Source: Paraphysomonas bandaiensis (taxonomy: Eukaryota; Protista; Chrysophyceae). From it: a stretch of 64,000 nt of DNA. Location: positions 186,001-250,000 of the forward strand of contig CBFFRP010000097.1 of the NCBI GenBank assembly GCA_965644295.1, given 5' to 3'. Each line of letters starts with the position of its first letter. The stretch's first letter is position 1. The position numbers and the translations under genes were made by a program. Under the pieces are notes generated by a model. The model saw nothing but the letters and a program-made list of their open reading frames with translations. It made no database searches and was not told the origin of the DNA. Shown here one piece after another: positions 57,300 through 64,000 of the stretch.

Positions 57300-59017
57300 G
57301 AGAATAGACCTCTCGTATAGCCGGATAGATGCCCGTTATACGGGTTACGTTAGATGTGTTTTATCTGCATCATATACCATATAGCTGTACATGTATATAT
57401 ATATTTGTGTGGGCTGTGGACAATCAGTGTACAGCCAGGTGTGCACTTAAAACCAGTCACAGTGCTATAGGGAGCATGCTAGACTATGTCCTGTTGCTCC
57501 ATAACAACCACCATACTAAACTATGATAAGGCTACATTATTATCATTACGGATAGCATCATACACGTGTAGCCGTGTTAAGCTGATGCTTATCTGCTACA
57601 CATATATACGGATCTGAGTCGATAGAACACACTGTCTCAATGAACTGTTACAAGTAGGTAGAATACATGACACGTACAGATCAATAATACACAATGGAAT
57701 CAGTCACAGATGGAGACGCCGAGGCACTCACCGTATTATCAGTAAGTCGCCATGGTGCTTCTGAGCAACACTGCGACGTGCTAGTAAGTCACATATCCTG
57801 AAGATAGGAATGAGAGTTCACAAATATACATTTGACAAACTCTCATCTGCCACCTCTATAATCTACCCCAAATATTAGCTCAACACTTTCGTCTTGTCAT
57901 TTTTATTAGAAAGCTGATAATTGGCAAGCAAGCTATCTTACTTTGGTTTCAAGTGCTGAACGGGACGAAGGTTGAGTGTCACATAGATCACAATCTTATT
58001 ATGTAAGCGTGACTGGCGGCAAATCAGCAATAACACACTGTAAGAGTTCCTTTAGAAGGCACAAGTTCCTGAAGATTTAATGCGATACATTATTTTCCAC
58101 ATACTTGTACCACAAGGGTTATTCTTAAAGCTAACTGTATCCACATAGCAAGGTTATTTTTGTCTCCTAATGCATCTGGAAGGCTAATAGAACTGTCAGT
58201 AAAAATGTGTTGCACAAGATACCCAATAAAACAGTGTTTGAGTTGGGGAAAGTGTTGAGGTACAGTCCAAGATTAACAAGATTAACAGAGATCGTTCGCA
58301 CTGTGTGAGAGGCAGACGAAGAAACTGTAGATAGTGAAAAGAATTCCCTACTGAGTAGATGTTTTATCGTAAAAATATAGTCGTGAATGTCTTATTATTA
58401 TCAATAAATGTATATGTTAGTTTCATAAATCGTCTACGGCGGGGTCGCGAAGATGGTTGCTTGTGAAGCTGTTGAAATGGTGGGCTATATAGATGACTGG
58501 AACCGCTATGCAAAGAAACAGTGTGATAATTTGTATTGACGGGAGACGGGAGAACTCATGGCACATGTCATCCACAGAAGATTATCATATAAATCGCGCT
58601 CAGTTAAAAAGCCGTCATAGCTCTTCATTGTAAGGGTAGCAGGGGTACCTATGGTTGCTGATTTTGTTGCAGTTGTACATACTCTCTCCCAGGACTTCGT
58701 GCATAAACCAAGGCTCTCCCAACCTATAAATGCCCTCATATGTACCTAACTCGAAGTGCTTTTATTCACACACACAGCTGAAGTACACTTCATATACTCA
58801 GGACAAGCATTTAAATTCAAATTCGACAATAATTGCTAATAGAAAAGAAATACTTGTCGAACTTAAGCTCGTTATTACAAACTACTACACTAGTGCTTAC
58901 GCCATCTTAAAGTTCATTTTCCAGTTGGATAATAAGGACAAGTAGAAATAACATTGACGGCTATCAGATGATGAAACCACAAAGCTTGGTAAACTGTTTT
59001 ACATACTATCCACTACT

Positions 59018-62000
59018 CTATGCATCATCGTTGTAATTGTGCGTCTTCGGCTTAGATCCACTGCTGGAGCTATATGGGAGAAAGAATTCGTCCTCTTTAG
59101 CTGTAGTCGCCACATTGCCGCTGACAAGGTTATTGTAGAAGCCATTAACTTGCGTGATAATCTGGCGAGCTTCCTCGGCACTAGTGGGCTCTTCTTGCGC
59201 AAGCTTATTCTGAGGCTTGCCATCTGAAGTTTTGTAGTTCTTGAGCCAGTCCACGAGACGGGAGATCGTGCCAGGCTTAACACGATCCAAATCATATACG
59301 CTGTGTACTTGATGGAAATGAGGATCAGAAGCCCTAAGCACGATAATCTTGTGGTCGGTCTCTCCCTCATCAATTAGCTCCATAGCACCAAGAACCTTGC
59401 AAGTAACCACCGCTCCCATGGGAAGAGCTCCCTCTCCAATTTCAATAGCATCGATGGGGTCGTTGTCTCCCTTGGCACCAGTCATGGCATCCACATGAGT
59501 GGAGTCCTCCCAGGTTTGAGGAAGCAGACCGTAATTGAAGAACGGTGTGCCGTAAGTGTAGTATCTTGGGGCATTGTTCTTTACATCTTGCATGATGGGA
59601 TTGTGTGGTTCCGTCTTGCTCACTTCCATCTTGGCAGTGGAGTACATCGGGATTTCTACAACAAAGTTAACCTCATGCTGGCTTTCGTCGGCCCACAACG
59701 GAATATCGTGCCAAGGCGACACAACCTTTCCTTCGTGGGTAATATACAGCTTGTAATCAGTTGTGCCGTAGTTGCCTTCATGTTTGGTAGACCTAGCGGT
59801 ATGGGGAACAACATTCTGGATGCTGTATGGAACCCAATCGGGACTGTCAACATTCTGATAATAATCACACACTATTTCCCAACCGGACTGAACCATGAAT
59901 CCGGGAGGGACACAGTTCTCCGCTAGAAGGTCACTGGGGATGGTTTTACCATTACTGACATCGCAAGGTACAGCTCCGGCTTTAGCAAGGGCACGCATCT
60001 TTGACCCGCTGATAGATATGAAATCATCCGGTCTGGAAGGGTCCATATCCTTCATGACATGGTCACGCTTGTCGTAGTACACTTTTCCAAAAGGAAGAAT
60101 CTCCATTGGCTCCTGTCCGGGAGACATAGTCAGGACATATCTGCCGTGGTTACCATCGTAGAGGTCGTCATCAGGATGCGAAACAGCTAGTTCACTGCCT
60201 TTCATACCAGCAGGATCACGGCCAGCAACGAAGAATGAAGCGCCAGCGTTCCTTCTGCTCTTGGCATGGAAAAGAACCTCAGTGGGCCCGGCGTAGATCA
60301 TGGGGGCTGGCCAGATCGCCATCACGGTCGTCTTGGGGTCGAGCATTCCCTCTGCCAATACAGCCTCGTGTTGCTTCACACGCACGTCTAAGGGCACGTC
60401 ATCGCTCTTGGTCCATCCGCCGAGGGGTGACAGCCAGAGGATAGGGTTGTTAAACCCACGCTTCAGAAGCATTTCACGGCCTGTTTTCATGAGGTAGGCA
60501 TGACCCGCGTGAGTAGGGTTTCTTGTCTGAAAAGCAAACACAGCGTCTGCATTCTTGTTCTCGAACTGCTTCATTACCTCCGTGGCGGTCAGGCGCCACT
60601 TATCGAGACCATCGTTGTACTGGATACGTTCAAGCAGTTCAATTTCTCCTCCGATTAACCAGTCGCCACCGGAGTATATATGCTTTATGTACGGATGCCC
60701 AGGATCGATCACTCCAAAGATACGGGACACAATTTCCTCCTTTCTATTGACATAGATTTCCGGGTTGCGAAGAATGGCAAGAGTATTTCCATGTTTACCA
60801 ACAAGTGCGACGGCTCCCTTTCCAGAAGATTCTATCGCTGTCTTAGTATACTCAGTACAGGGAAGTACAATGGGAACAGACATGGACACTCGTTTAGGAG
60901 GGGTGCTGGTGAAGTCCTCCATATCGGTCTTCTTGCTATATATGCCCTTGGTGCCCGTTAGATTGTGGGGGTCCACAAGCATGGAATTGAAGTGCATGGT
61001 CTGTAGCAGTACGCCCTCACGCATAAAACCACGCAGAGGGGCAGCCCAACCCTCACCAATAGTCTGCAGCCAATTCACATCAATGTCCGTAAGAAGAGCC
61101 TTAGGAAGAGTCTCTGCCTCAGCGCGGCGCTGCTTCACCAAGTGCGGAGGAATATGGAGGTCAACAATCTCATCACCATCAGGGTAGGGTAATCCGTTGG
61201 GGAGAGTAGGGCCACCCACAAGTACTCCTTCCTGACGAAGCCGGCGCATGATGACATCTACACTTTGTTGGATAGTCATGTCATGGTTCTTAATCACAAG
61301 GTCGGCATTAGTGGGGGCCTCGTACGGATCATCGACACCTAAAGAACGCAACATAAGATGGAGCTTTGTATATATGTGTACCCCAAATACCAGTAAAATG
61401 CTTGATCTCGCCAGCAGCAACTTTTTTGTACAGACCCTTGGGGTCTCTGTCCTGCACCACAGTAAGCGGCACGTCCATAAACACCTCAAGAAATTTAATG
61501 CCCTGCTCATCGTGTCGCTTGCGAGCCAAGTCTCTGTCCTCACGGTAGGGCGAGACAAGGGACACAATTGTTATTGTACCGGCATCCGAGAACAGACAAG
61601 CCAGCTCACCAACACGACGAACGCTTTCAGCACGGTCAGATTTAGAGAACCCTAGATCACGATTAAGACCAGTGCGAATATTGTCCCCATCAAGACGATA
61701 GACGCTCTTGCCGTAACGGGTGACCAATTGCTCTTCCAACAAACTAGCGATAGTACTTTTTCCACTGCCAGACAATCCAGTCATCCATAAAGTAATTCCT
61801 TTCTGATCAAGAGCAGCATAGCGGCGTTCTCTGGGAAGATGGCAGGCTTCCTGTGATCCACCTTCACCGGCTTCTATGCACTCAATGATATGTGGTTTGG
61901 ACTGGGATAAAATCTTTTCACGGTATGCACCGATATCAAAATCTTCCATATTGAAAGAAGCAGAAGATGTGTGAATAGGATTTGCAGTAGAGGTCATGGC

Positions 62001-62300
62001 AACTTCATCACAGTTCGCGTGTCCTCCGGCTCTGGCCAGTACATACACAATAGCTGACAGCACCATACTGTATACACCCCATTACACATATATCCATATA
62101 TATGCATATGCGACAAGATACTTACAATCCGATACATATATCTCGTTTTTTGGTGAATTCATCACTATCGTGAGCACGGCCTCCATGTCCTGGTGCATCA
62201 GGGTTCTATATCGATACATACACATGTAAGTATCGCCATATATAGACATACATCACACTATACACACCGTTGAAAGCGGGTTATACTCATACCGCGGCAT
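59018..62300 (-). CDS. PAPSS: Trifunctional APS kinase + ATP sulfurylase + inorganic pyrophosphatase (PAPS synthase fusion) with N-terminal signal-anchor, 4 exons
   Basis: Exons 62300-62268, 62205-62126, 62067-61391, 61338-59018. APK: WMTGLSGSGKST, LDGDNIR, RDPKGLY, FTG/VDDPYE. ATPS: QTRNPTHAGH, GRDPAG, ISGSKMR. PPase: SPWHDIPL, NYGLLPQTWE, GDNDPID, DEGETDHK, YK. Confidence 0.95.
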
Positions 62301-62931
62301 TCTCTTCAGAGGGTATCTGATCCTGCAACTTGATGTGCAATATATACCCACAATATAATGATCTACTTCTTATAAATAAGTGAAGTAAGTAGATCACTCC
62401 ACACTGCTATGTATATATGTATGTATGTACGTAAGGTATGTATGTATGACTACTGGTGGTGTGAGCTGTTGATATATTCCACATGCTGTAGATTCCATAT
62501 AAAAAAAAGTAGAAGTCATTTGAAAACCATTCATCTTGAAAAGCTTTCTTTCAGTTTTGATATCACTATGAATGGGATATGAAATACAGAGTATACTGTA
62601 GATGGTATACCCGGCCTCTTCCTCATCATTCATTCATAAAAAAAAAACATCCTTCATCTTTATACGTATGTAAGTGTATATAAGCGTATGTTTCTATATA
62701 TAGATATCTCCATCCATCATCTCCTCCTCCTGTAGGTGTCAGTACACACCATAGTATAGCAGTAACACATCGCCATATGTACACCAGGAGGGAGTGGTAG
62801 TCGACATCTATAGATTAAAGAACAGCATCTCATCACTACTATAGTAACAAGCATTCATATGACTGAATGAGTCATATATTATTATAGCAGTACATCTATA
62901 CGAGGATATATACAGTCAGTCTATCATATAT

Positions 62932-64000
62932 ATGGAGTCACAAACAGGAGATTTAGAAGATTGGCAAGAATGGAACCCATCCAAACTATCATTTGTTGGT
63001 CATATGATTGCAGGAAGTTTTGCTGGTTTAGCAGAACATGTATCTATATTTCCACTCGATACACTTAAGACGAATATACAGTGTGAAAAGTGTGGTTCGA
63101 GTAGTCCGTTTAAAACTTTGAGTTGTGCTCAACGAATTGTTAAGAATGATGGGATATTGCGCTTATGGCGTGGTGTTGGTGCCATGTTTTTAGGGTGTAT
63201 TCCAGGTACAATATTTTTCTGTCATGCTGTTTTGTTAATATAGTTGTTTTAGCACATGCTGCTTACTTTAGCCTTTTCGAAACAATGAAAACTGGATTGG
63301 GTGCAGATAAGGAAGGACATTTTCCATTGGAGGCGGCACTTTGTGGTGCAGCTGCAACATTCGCTCACGATTTCATCATGACACCTTTTGATGTTGTCAA
63401 ACAACGTCTACAATTAGGCTATCACAAGAACCTCTTGGATTGCGCTCGGTCTATACTTTTTCGTGAAGGTCCCAAAGCATTATATCTGTCTTTTCCAACT
63501 ACTGTCGTAATGAATTTACCTTACGGTTGCATAATGGTCTCAACCAATGAATCAGTCCGGAAAGTACTGAATCCTAGTGGTGGTTACTCGATGCAAACGT
63601 CAATGTTGGCAGGGTGTATATCTGGTGCTGTGGCATCCCTAGTCACAACACCGTTAGATGTTGTGAAAACTCGTTTACAAACTCAGAATTTGGTATCCCG
63701 ATCTGTGTCATCAAGTACGATCTCGAGACCTCAAAATGCATTAAATACATTCGCAACGCCAAAGTTATACCCTAGATATATGGTTTCTGTTACTTCTCCA
63801 GAAAAGATTCCGTTTGAAGGGAGTATGCATGGAACACCAAGATATAGCACAATGAGACAGACAATACGACGTATCATTGCAGAAGAAGGGTACTTGGCAT
63901 TTTGGAAAGGGGCTCTCCCTAGAATGATGGTTCATGCTCCTTCGGTTGCCGTATCTTGGACTGCTTACGAGCTCGCGAAATCATGTTTAGAGAATGTATA
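62932..64000 (+). CDS. Mitochondrial iron carrier (mitoferrin, MRS3/4-like SLC25), runs off the window end
   Basis: DWQEW...HMIAGSFAGLAEHVSIFPLDTLKT, GCIP/AHAAYF, HDFIMTPFDVVKQRLQ, SFPTTVVMNLPY, TTPLDVVKTRLQ, PSVAVSWTAYE; intron near 63206-63252. Confidence 0.92.

What the first reader, a model, noticed from the sequence alone, without database searches (positions are those of the whole stretch)
62010..62300. Hidden micro-exons give the PAPS synthase fusion a Golgi-type signal anchor
Seen: two short exons missed by the ORF track (62300-62268 and 62205-62126, GT-AG introns of 62 and 58 nt) splice in frame to give MPRYEYNPLSTNPDAPGHGGRAHDSDEFTKKRD-ICIGFMVLSAIVYVLA-RAGG..., then a ~75-aa stem and the APS kinase domain. 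Known: PAPS synthases are normally soluble (cytosol, nucleus or organelle), and PAPS is imported into the Golgi by SLC35B-type transporters. A short tail with KKR before a ~16-aa TM plus a stem is the classic type II Golgi enzyme layout; YNPL fits a YxxL sorting signal. Inference: the whole sulfate-activation chain (ATPS, APK, PPase) may be tethered in the secretory lumen, making PAPS where sulfotransferases use it and bypassing PAPS import. I do not know of a described case.
Basis: partly seen in the sequence, partly recalled or inferred. Interest (0 to 1): 0.8.

Follow-up and report, generated by a model that had tools for sequence, protein, structure and literature searches.

The report
Membrane-anchored PAPS synthase fusion, conserved
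Two tiny expressed exons give this alga-like protist's only sulfate-activating enzyme (APS kinase + ATP sulfurylase + pyrophosphatase) a conserved membrane anchor, which suggests, without proving, that activated sulfate (PAPS) is made inside the secretory system and not in the cytosol as reviews state.

Summary
RNA contigs from three independent studies carry exactly the proposed joints (62268|62205, 62126|62067, plus 61391|61338). A DNA run is unspliced. Transcripts reach 62368-62397, past an in-frame stop, so ATG 62300 is the start.

The exons encode a 33-aa tail (MPRYEYNPL...KKRD) and a 16-aa hydrophobic segment. Both are conserved across ochrophytes: chrysophytes, brown algae, diatoms, eustigmatophytes and dictyochophytes. 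Oomycetes, pelagophytes, chlorarachniophytes and a diplonemid have different tail+TM sequences at the same position. Soluble two-domain PAPS synthases have none.

Indirect evidence favours catalytic domains in the lumen:
- N-flank K+R is 3.7 versus 0.55 for the C-flank in oomycetes.
- Cysteines are very scarce, but one Cys pair is invariant and sits in an insertion absent from soluble PAPSS.
- Ochrophytes keep one invariant N-x-T sequon; other sequons are about 9-fold depleted.

Against the "bypass import" idea:
- This is the genome's only detected ATP sulfurylase.
- The genome also encodes a soluble-looking APS kinase, a PAPS reductase-glutaredoxin fusion, a SULT-like enzyme and a PAPST1-like transporter.
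- APS/PAPS must therefore cross a membrane either way.

Golgi residence is untested. I found no paper describing the anchor; the papers read call the fusion cytosolic or plastidial. Lumenal reading about 0.6. This is a new variant of a known kind.

The parts
62301..62397 (-). 5' untranslated leader. Transcript contigs end at 62390, 62368 and 62397. It has no ATG and an in-frame stop at about 62372-62370.
62268..62300 (-). Micro-exon 1 (33 nt). It holds start codon ATG 62300 and residues 1-11, MPRYEYNPLST, the conserved extreme N-terminal Y-x-Y-x-P-L motif.
62206..62267 (-). Intron 1, 62 nt, GT..AG.
   Evidence: Joint 62268|62205 in RNA contigs of 3 runs and absent from the DNA run
62126..62205 (-). 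Micro-exon 2 (80 nt). It encodes residues 12-38: the rest of the tail, the KKRD flank, and the first residues of the TM segment (TM starts at 62139).
62068..62125 (-). Intron 2, 58 nt, GT..AG. It interrupts the TM-coding segment.
   Evidence: Joint 62126|62067 in RNA contigs of 3 runs
62034..62067 (-). Second part of the 16-aa hydrophobic segment (residues 38-49, ...MVLSAIVYVLA), followed by the invariant Arg.
61803..62033 (-). Stem, about residues 50-126. It has a variable linker with a conserved Cys57, then the conserved module FDIGAYR...PHIIEC(101)...QEAC(113)HLPR leading into the kinase.
61391..61802 (-). APS kinase domain, main part, with the P-loop GLSGSGKS.
   Evidence: Pfam PF01583, 185 bits
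61339..61390 (-). Intron 3, 52 nt, GT..AG, inside the APS kinase domain.
60626..61183 (-). PUA-like domain of ATP sulfurylase. It contains the invariant sequon N389-L-T at 60964-60956, within a lineage-specific insertion.
   Evidence: Pfam PF14306; sequon 54/54
59960..60601 (-). ATP sulfurylase catalytic domain (QTRNPTHAGH motif). Directly after it lies a roughly 20-aa insertion with the invariant pair Cys722 (59965-59963) and Cys739 (59914-59912).
   Evidence: Pfam PF01747, 187 bits; Cys pair
59144..59665 (-). Family I inorganic pyrophosphatase domain. The stop codon is at 59020-59018.
   Evidence: Pfam PF00719, 122 bits

Best explanation
The gene encodes a 1036-aa single-pass membrane protein. 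Its parts, in order, are a 33-aa cytosolic tail with a Tyr-based motif, a K/R-rich flank, a 16-aa uncleaved signal-anchor, a stem, and then APS kinase, ATP sulfurylase and inorganic pyrophosphatase.

Shown: the exons are expressed and spliced as proposed, and the tail+TM architecture is conserved in one clade of triple-fusion enzymes.

Inferred: the anchor inserts N-in/C-out (type II). The whole sulfate-activation chain would then work in the lumen of the ER/Golgi system, using imported ATP and sulfate, with the fused pyrophosphatase removing PPi where no cytosolic PPase is available. PAPS would feed the many anchor-bearing sulfotransferases directly.

Because this is the only ATP sulfurylase found in the genome, PAPS/APS would also have to be exchanged with the cytosol, with SLC35B-type carriers as candidates. 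This parallels plastid or Entamoeba-mitosome PAPS production rather than a true bypass of transport.
For: Expression and splicing: (three studies).

Start codon.

Conservation: the ochrophyte TM is exactly 16 aa in 52 of 55 sequences, with signature xCxGFxxLxAIVYVL[AS]R. Pelagophytes, oomycetes, chlorarachniophytes and Diplonema have unrelated TM sequences at the same place. Anchored fusions form one side of a branch against soluble PAPSS, with SH-aLRT 93.

Topology:
- K+R in the N-flank versus the C-flank is 3.66 versus 0.55 in 29 oomycete sequences and 2.6 versus 1.3 in ochrophytes.
- Distant homologues lack a consistent -3/-1 cleavage pattern.

Signs of an oxidising compartment:
- Oomycete proteins have a median of 4 Cys per about 1014 aa.
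- After the TM there are only a stem Cys and the invariant pair C722/C739. This pair sits in an insertion missing from soluble PAPSS.
- Cys content is 0.76% here versus 2.12% in other long open frames (>=250 aa) of the window. It is 0.73% versus 1.57% for anchored versus soluble homologues.
- Some stems carry CPxCP-like repeats.

Exposure to the glycosylation machinery:
- One invariant sequon is present in 54 of 54 ochrophyte sequences.
- Other N-x-S/T motifs occur 13 times, against 117 for the reversed tripeptide.
- Controls give 58 versus 55 and 54 versus 40.

Precedent: ATPS, APK and PPase together inside an organelle in Entamoeba mitosomes (PMC3149026).
Against: - No direct localisation or topology data exist.
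- This is the only ATP sulfurylase hit in the 62.6-Mb assembly.
- The genome still encodes an intron-bearing stand-alone APS kinase without any TM, a PAPS reductase-glutaredoxin fusion without a signal, and a soluble-looking SULT-type sulfotransferase. A cytosol-facing enzyme would serve all of these most simply.
- A PAPST1-like carrier is present, as in organisms that import cytosolic PAPS.
- In ochrophytes the 15-residue net charge difference across the TM is about 0.
- Sequons are not depleted in oomycetes.
- The Cys and sequon statistics rest on related sequences, so they are not independent samples.
- A lumenal supply of sulfate is hypothetical.
Confidence: 0.6

Rival explanations
1. Cytosol-facing tether. 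The hydrophobic segment anchors the enzyme on the cytosolic face of ER/Golgi, or of another endomembrane. PAPS would be made in the cytosol next to SLC35B-type importers and remain available to cytosolic PAPS reductase, APS kinase and sulfotransferases.
For: - This is the sole ATP sulfurylase.
- Soluble-looking APK, PAPS reductase-Grx and SULT-like genes are present.
- A PAPST1-like carrier is present.
- The strongly conserved TM sequence could be a protein-protein contact, for example with a carrier.
- The papers read take the fusion to be cytosolic (PMC4220642).
Against: - It would require translocating a 30-100-aa charged tail whose membrane-proximal flank carries 3-5 K/R, against the positive-inside rule.
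- It gives no reason for sequon depletion with one invariant sequon.
- It gives no reason for the near-absence of Cys apart from an invariant pair.
- The conserved Tyr motif at the N-terminus would be lumenal and unexplained.
Confidence: 0.25
2. Cleaved, N-extended signal peptide. The 16-aa segment acts as an h-region, and signal peptidase cuts after VL[A/S]. This would release a soluble lumenal or secreted enzyme.
For: - In ochrophytes, -3 is Val and -1 is Ala or Ser throughout.
- 16 residues is short for an anchor.
Against: - The tail and TM sequence are too strongly conserved for a discarded peptide.
- Pelagophyte, oomycete, chlorarachniophyte and diplonemid homologues have 19-25-aa segments without a consistent -3/-1 pattern.
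- There is no C-terminal retention signal, so a soluble form would be lost by secretion.
Confidence: 0.07
3. Organelle targeting. This would be either a bipartite plastid or periplastid presequence, as Patron et al. read the Thalassiosira pseudonana model, or a mitochondrial intermembrane-space anchor, by analogy with Euglena's mitochondrial sulfate pathway.
For: - PMC2275785 describes a signal peptide plus a transit-like region in T. pseudonana.
- Diatom stems are Ser/Thr/Ala-rich.
- PMC2275785 places Euglena's sulfate assimilation pathway in mitochondria.
Against: - The hydrophobic segment follows a 33-aa acidic/basic tail, so it is not an N-terminal signal peptide.
- The residue after it is Arg, not Phe/Trp/Tyr/Leu.
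- The stem here contains Asp and Glu.
- The same architecture exists in plastid-lacking oomycetes and diplonemids.
- The tails are acidic, unlike mitochondrial presequences.
Confidence: 0.05

Closest known systems
APK-ATPS-PPase triple fusion of stramenopiles and haptophytes (Patron et al. 2008, PMC2275785; Prioretti et al. 2014, PMC4220642)
   Same: It has the same three domains in the same order. The window protein is an orthologue: 82% identical over the exon-4 part (772 aa) to MMETSP transcript P0001, and it sits in the ochrophyte clade.
   Different: The papers read call the fusion cytosolic, or plastidial in T. pseudonana. The conserved tail plus TM segment is not described in any paper I could read. 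Many public gene models start inside or after the TM because the micro-exons were missed.
Metazoan PAPS synthases PAPSS1/2
   Same: They share the APS kinase-ATP sulfurylase fusion that makes PAPS for sulfation.
   Different: Soluble-type homologues (P0168, P0194, P0229, P0343) lack the tail, the TM, the PPase domain and the insertion with the Cys pair. They have more Cys and no sequon depletion.
Compartmentalised sulfate activation in Entamoeba mitosomes (PMC3149026)
   Same: ATP sulfurylase, APS kinase and inorganic pyrophosphatase sit together inside a membrane-bound compartment.
   Different: The organelle is different (mitosome matrix), the enzymes are three separate soluble proteins, and localisation there was shown by immuno-EM. 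Here it is only inferred.
Type II Golgi enzymes, including lumenal nucleotide-sugar interconverting enzymes such as UDP-xylose synthase (from general knowledge)
   Same: The layout is the same: a short cytosolic tail, a basic flank, a short TM, a stem, then a catalytic domain that would make an activated donor in the lumen.
   Different: Those enzymes interconvert imported nucleotide sugars. De novo ATP-dependent activation of sulfate in the lumen has, to my knowledge, not been described.

Membership tests
APS kinase-ATP sulfurylase-pyrophosphatase triple fusion (PAPS synthase type) | APS kinase domain with an intact P-loop | tested here: met
   PF01583, 185 bits; GLSGSGKS present
APS kinase-ATP sulfurylase-pyrophosphatase triple fusion (PAPS synthase type) | PUA-like plus ATP sulfurylase catalytic domain with the QTRNPxHxxH motif | tested here: met
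   PF14306, 117 bits; PF01747, 187 bits; FQTRNPTHAGH present
APS kinase-ATP sulfurylase-pyrophosphatase triple fusion (PAPS synthase type) | C-terminal family I inorganic pyrophosphatase on the same polypeptide, in the order APK-ATPS-PPase | tested here: met
   PF00719, 122 bits. One RNA contig spans all domains.
APS kinase-ATP sulfurylase-pyrophosphatase triple fusion (PAPS synthase type) | Catalytic activity (sulfate to PAPS, PPi hydrolysis) | not testable with these tools
   Needs an enzyme assay
Type II (N-in/C-out) signal-anchor protein of the ER/Golgi | A single N-proximal hydrophobic segment and no other TM | tested here: met
   16-aa core, Kyte-Doolittle 2.62. The next-best 19-residue window scores 1.56.
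Type II (N-in/C-out) signal-anchor protein of the ER/Golgi | More K/R on the N-terminal flank than on the C-terminal flank | tested here: met
   Ochrophytes 2.6 versus 1.3; oomycete orthologues 3.66 versus 0.55. The net 15-residue charge difference in ochrophytes is about 0.
Type II (N-in/C-out) signal-anchor protein of the ER/Golgi | The anchor is not cleaved | tested here: inconclusive
   Ochrophytes have V-L-[A/S] before the invariant Arg; distant homologues have no such pattern. No SignalP or mass spectrometry was available.
Type II (N-in/C-out) signal-anchor protein of the ER/Golgi | Catalytic domain in the lumen | tested here: inconclusive
   Evidence is indirect only: Cys scarcity with an invariant pair, sequon depletion with an invariant sequon. 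The metabolic context argues the other way.
Type II (N-in/C-out) signal-anchor protein of the ER/Golgi | Golgi residence | not testable with these tools
   Needs microscopy or fractionation
Bipartite plastid-targeting presequence of complex-plastid algae | Signal peptide at the extreme N-terminus, followed by a cleavage site with an aromatic residue or Leu at +1 | tested here: not met
   A 33-aa charged tail precedes the hydrophobic segment, and the next residue is an invariant Arg.
Bipartite plastid-targeting presequence of complex-plastid algae | Restricted to plastid-bearing lineages | tested here: not met
   The same architecture occurs in oomycetes and Diplonema.

The most novel reading that the evidence does not exclude
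In stramenopiles, chlorarachniophytes and diplonemids the default site of sulfate activation would be the lumen of the endomembrane system. A type II-anchored APK-ATPS-PPase would make PAPS there. Where it is the only ATP sulfurylase, as in this genome, all activated sulfate would be exported from the lumen by SLC35B-type carriers running outward. That includes the supply for cytosolic PAPS reductase and sulfotransferases. The pyrophosphatase fusion would then be explained by the lack of soluble PPase in that compartment.
Probability: 0.4. Interest if true: 0.85.

Novelty: new variant of a known kind. Interest (0 to 1): 0.72.

Why it matters
Reviews place PAPS synthesis in the cytosol, nucleus or plastid and treat Golgi sulfation as dependent on PAPS import. 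A conserved anchor on the main, and here the only, sulfate-activating enzyme of ochrophytes, oomycetes, chlorarachniophytes and diplonemids has three consequences:

- It gives a testable reason for the long-unexplained pyrophosphatase fusion.
- It revises the 'cytosolic' and 'plastid' assignments in algal sulfur-metabolism reviews.
- It bears on how brown algae and diatoms supply the large PAPS flux needed for sulfated polysaccharides.

It also shows that many public gene models of this enzyme are truncated at the 5' end because of micro-exons.

Tried and rejected
- **P. tricornutum N-glycoproteome (PMC8678454 supplement).** The PAPSS fusion B7FXQ3 is listed. However, the reported site N721 in DTN(1)SDG is not a sequon, and the table also lists mitochondrial proteins and other non-sequon sites. 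I do not count it as evidence.
- **Literature searches.** Searches for a membrane-bound, Golgi or TM-bearing PAPS synthase in algae, and for the Phaeodactylum gene identifiers, found nothing relevant. Bradley et al. 2009 is not held, so I cannot exclude that it mentions the N-terminus.
- **Sulfite reductase domains PF01077 and PF03460.** Both gave no hit. This is absence in a draft assembly, not proof.
- **Earlier notes of the scan.** They contain only the same reading of the same stretch.
- **A soluble isoform from an alternative downstream start.** Contigs show only the full 5' end, and downstream Met62 is not conserved in the orthologue N-termini. Contigs cannot exclude a minor isoform.
- **Not run.** I did not run structure or complex prediction, because the tools return no coordinates and so could not measure the Cys-Cys distance. 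No TM or signal-peptide predictor was available.

Full report
**1. The observation**

On the minus strand, ATG 62300 opens a 33-nt exon. A 62-nt GT..AG intron follows, then an 80-nt exon, then a 58-nt GT..AG intron. The reading frame then continues into the long ORF at 62067. A third 52-nt intron (61390-61339) lies in the kinase domain. The spliced CDS is 3111 nt and gives 1036 aa.

I laid contigs of four public runs on 59000-63400. Three RNA-type runs from three different studies each hold one contig with exactly the joints 62268|62205, 62126|62067 and 61391|61338. One of these runs is a declared polyA metatranscriptome. The DNA run X18 covers the stretch collinearly with no joint.

The RNA contigs reach 62390, 62368 and 62397. 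That 97-nt leader has no ATG and carries an in-frame stop. ATG 62300, which has an A at -3, is therefore the first start codon.

**2. What the gene is**

Pfam finds APS_kinase (185 bits), PUA_2 (117), ATP-sulfurylase (187) and Pyrophosphatase (122). This is the APK-ATPS-PPase triple fusion known from stramenopiles and haptophytes (PMC2275785, PMC4220642).

The best database relative is a complete MMETSP transcript, P0001, at 82% identity over the exon-4 part (772 aa). Next come Ochromonas danica and Ochromonadaceae sp.. In a quick ML tree the window protein is sister to P0001 plus Ochromonas, inside a fully supported ochrophyte clade.

**3. The anchor is conserved, not a local accident**

Among the hits, 55 full N-termini carry the same three elements:
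- a tail beginning M-P-x-Y-x-Y-x-P-[LV];
- a [KR]-rich flank;
- a hydrophobic segment that is exactly 16 residues in 52 of 55, with signature xCxGFxxLxAIVYVL[AS]R.

These come from chrysophytes, Ectocarpus, the diatoms Corethron and Thalassiosira, Nannochloropsis and Florenciella. Many genome-derived models instead begin 'M[IL]LSAIVYVLA...' or further downstream.

Other lineages keep a tail and a TM at the same position but with unrelated sequences:
- Pelagophytes (Chrysophaeum), followed by heptad-like stems.
- 29 full-length oomycete proteins (Pythium, Phytophthora, Saprolegnia, Aphanomyces and others).
- Chlorarachniophyte transcripts and Amorphochlora.
- Diplonema papillatum.

Soluble two-domain PAPS synthase-type proteins have no such segment. 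All anchored or triple-fusion sequences fall on one side of a branch against those soluble forms, with SH-aLRT 93.

**4. Which way does it face?**

Nothing here measures topology. Four indirect lines point to N-in/C-out.

(a) Positive-inside rule.
- In oomycetes the 12 residues before the TM hold 3.66 K/R on average, and the 12 after it hold 0.55.
- Chlorarachniophyte tails carry RR..R..RPK before the TM.
- In ochrophytes the count is 2.6 versus 1.3 within 8 residues, although the 15-residue net charge difference is about 0.

(b) The extreme N-terminus keeps a Y-x-x-hydrophobic motif: 44 of 55 ochrophytes, and LYASV in oomycetes. This makes sense as a cytosolic sorting signal.

(c) Cysteines.
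- The model has 10 Cys in 1036 aa. The catalytic part has 0.76% Cys, against 2.12% in the other long open frames (>=250 aa) of the window.
- Anchored homologues average 0.73% and soluble homologues 1.57%.
- Oomycete proteins have a median of 4 Cys in about 1014 aa. After the TM they keep only one stem Cys and the pair equivalent to C722/C739.
- That pair is invariant in every triple fusion examined. It lies in a roughly 20-residue insertion that soluble PAPSS lacks.
- C101 and C113 are invariant in ochrophytes.
- Some stems carry CPxCP-type repeats.
- Few free Cys plus invariant close pairs is the pattern expected of a protein that folds in an oxidising lumen.

(d) Sequons.
- In 54 ochrophyte orthologues, N389-[LIVT]-T is present in all.
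- All other N-x-S/T motifs together occur 13 times in 9 alignment columns. The reversed tripeptide S/T-x-N occurs 117 times in 44 columns, not counting one invariant column.
- Soluble homologues give 58 versus 55, and other long open frames of the window give 54 versus 40.
- Selection against sequons has no obvious cause in the cytosol.

Caveats: the sequences are related and therefore not independent, and oomycetes show no sequon depletion (5-9 per protein).

**5. What argues the other way**

- The 62.6-Mb assembly has a single ATP sulfurylase hit, and it is this gene.
- It has a second, intron-bearing, stand-alone APS kinase with no hydrophobic N-terminus.
- It has a PAPS reductase-glutaredoxin fusion without a signal (NCBIfam, 235 bits).
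- It has a SULT-like sulfotransferase without a TM.
- It has several anchor-bearing sulfotransferases.
- It has about nine UAA/SLC35B-family genes. The nearest Atlas clusters for one of them (G000:C119) are PAPST1/SLC35B2, a feature-based lead scoring 0.97.

So cytosolic APS/PAPS is needed and a PAPS carrier is probably present.

A cytosol-facing tether would satisfy this context most simply, which is why I hold it at 0.25. Organelle-made, exported PAPS does have precedents, however. Plastids are one (general knowledge). Entamoeba mitosomes are another: they concentrate ATP sulfurylase, APS kinase and inorganic pyrophosphatase together (PMC3149026).

**6. Other readings**

A cleaved, N-extended signal peptide fits the V-L-[A/S]|R pattern of ochrophytes. 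It does not fit the strong conservation of tail and TM, nor the distant homologues.

The plastid reading proposed for T. pseudonana (PMC2275785) fails for three reasons. A charged tail precedes the hydrophobic segment. The following residue is Arg. The architecture also occurs in plastid-lacking oomycetes and diplonemids.

**7. Literature and novelty**

Patron et al. 2008 and Prioretti et al. 2014 treat the fusion as cytosolic, or as plastidial in T. pseudonana with a caution about the gene model. Mueller and Shafqat 2013 mention only the triple fusion. No search returned a paper describing a membrane anchor or lumenal PAPS synthesis. Bradley et al. 2009 could not be read.

I class this as a new variant of a known kind: a known enzyme fusion with an unrecognised, widely conserved membrane anchor and a probable new compartment.

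**8. Verdict**

- Exons and anchor are real (about 0.97).
- Lumen-facing type II enzyme: 0.6.
- Cytosol-facing tether: 0.25.
- Cleaved signal: 0.07.
- Organelle targeting: 0.05.
- Golgi residence specifically is untested.

Noticed in passing
window 62784-63400 (+ strand): The divergent neighbour is a mitochondrial-carrier-like gene starting at ATG 62932. RNA contigs begin at 62784-62836 and show a 47-nt GT..AG intron (63204-63250). The two genes share a divergent intergenic region of about 390 bp (62398-62783).
   Followed up: partly
L001 (G000:C371:147810-151217), minus strand: A stand-alone APS kinase (Pfam, 201 bits) with at least one intron and the N-terminus MSTNSSSNSNLFWHGG..., without a TM. 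The only ATP sulfurylase found in the genome is the anchored fusion, so its APS source is unclear.
   Followed up: partly
L014:1195-2607 (G000:C146): A PAPS reductase fused to a glutaredoxin domain (471 aa; NCBIfam phosphoadenylyl-sulfate reductase, 235 bits), yet neither sulfite reductase domain (PF01077, PF03460) was found in the assembly. The fate of the sulfite is unexplained.
   Followed up: partly
L008:1183-2502 (G000:C119): A UAA-family carrier of 440 aa. Its nearest ESM-Atlas clusters are 'Adenosine 3'-phospho 5'-phosphosulfate transporter 1' (0.97). It is a candidate PAPS carrier, and the direction of transport is unknown.
   Followed up: partly
P0158 (Amorphochlora amoebiformis) and P0157: These triple-fusion relatives have a kinase domain without the P-loop (GITLWVTARD / GATVWVTSRD in place of GLSGSGKS), so the APS kinase domain may be inactive. 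They still keep the invariant Cys pair.
   Followed up: no
L036/L033 (G000:C254) and L034 (G000:C253): Inositol-monophosphatase/PAP-phosphatase family genes. One has a weakly hydrophobic N-terminal segment and one has a C-terminal TM. They are candidates for a membrane-bound PAP phosphatase.
   Followed up: no
window 62404-62451; L001:2165-2583: Long CATA/TACA-type (TATG/TACATACA) simple repeats lie in intergenic DNA and next to introns. They generate spurious ORFs such as MYVCMYVC... The reads tool skipped 62404-62451 as a repeat.
   Followed up: no
public protein models P0004, P0009, P0021, P0031, P0065, P0087, P0088 and others: Many database models of this enzyme begin inside or just after the TM segment (M[IL]LSAIVYVLA..., MLARA...). 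This points to the same missed 5' micro-exons in other genomes, and it would produce false 'signal peptide' or 'cytosolic' predictions.
   Followed up: partly
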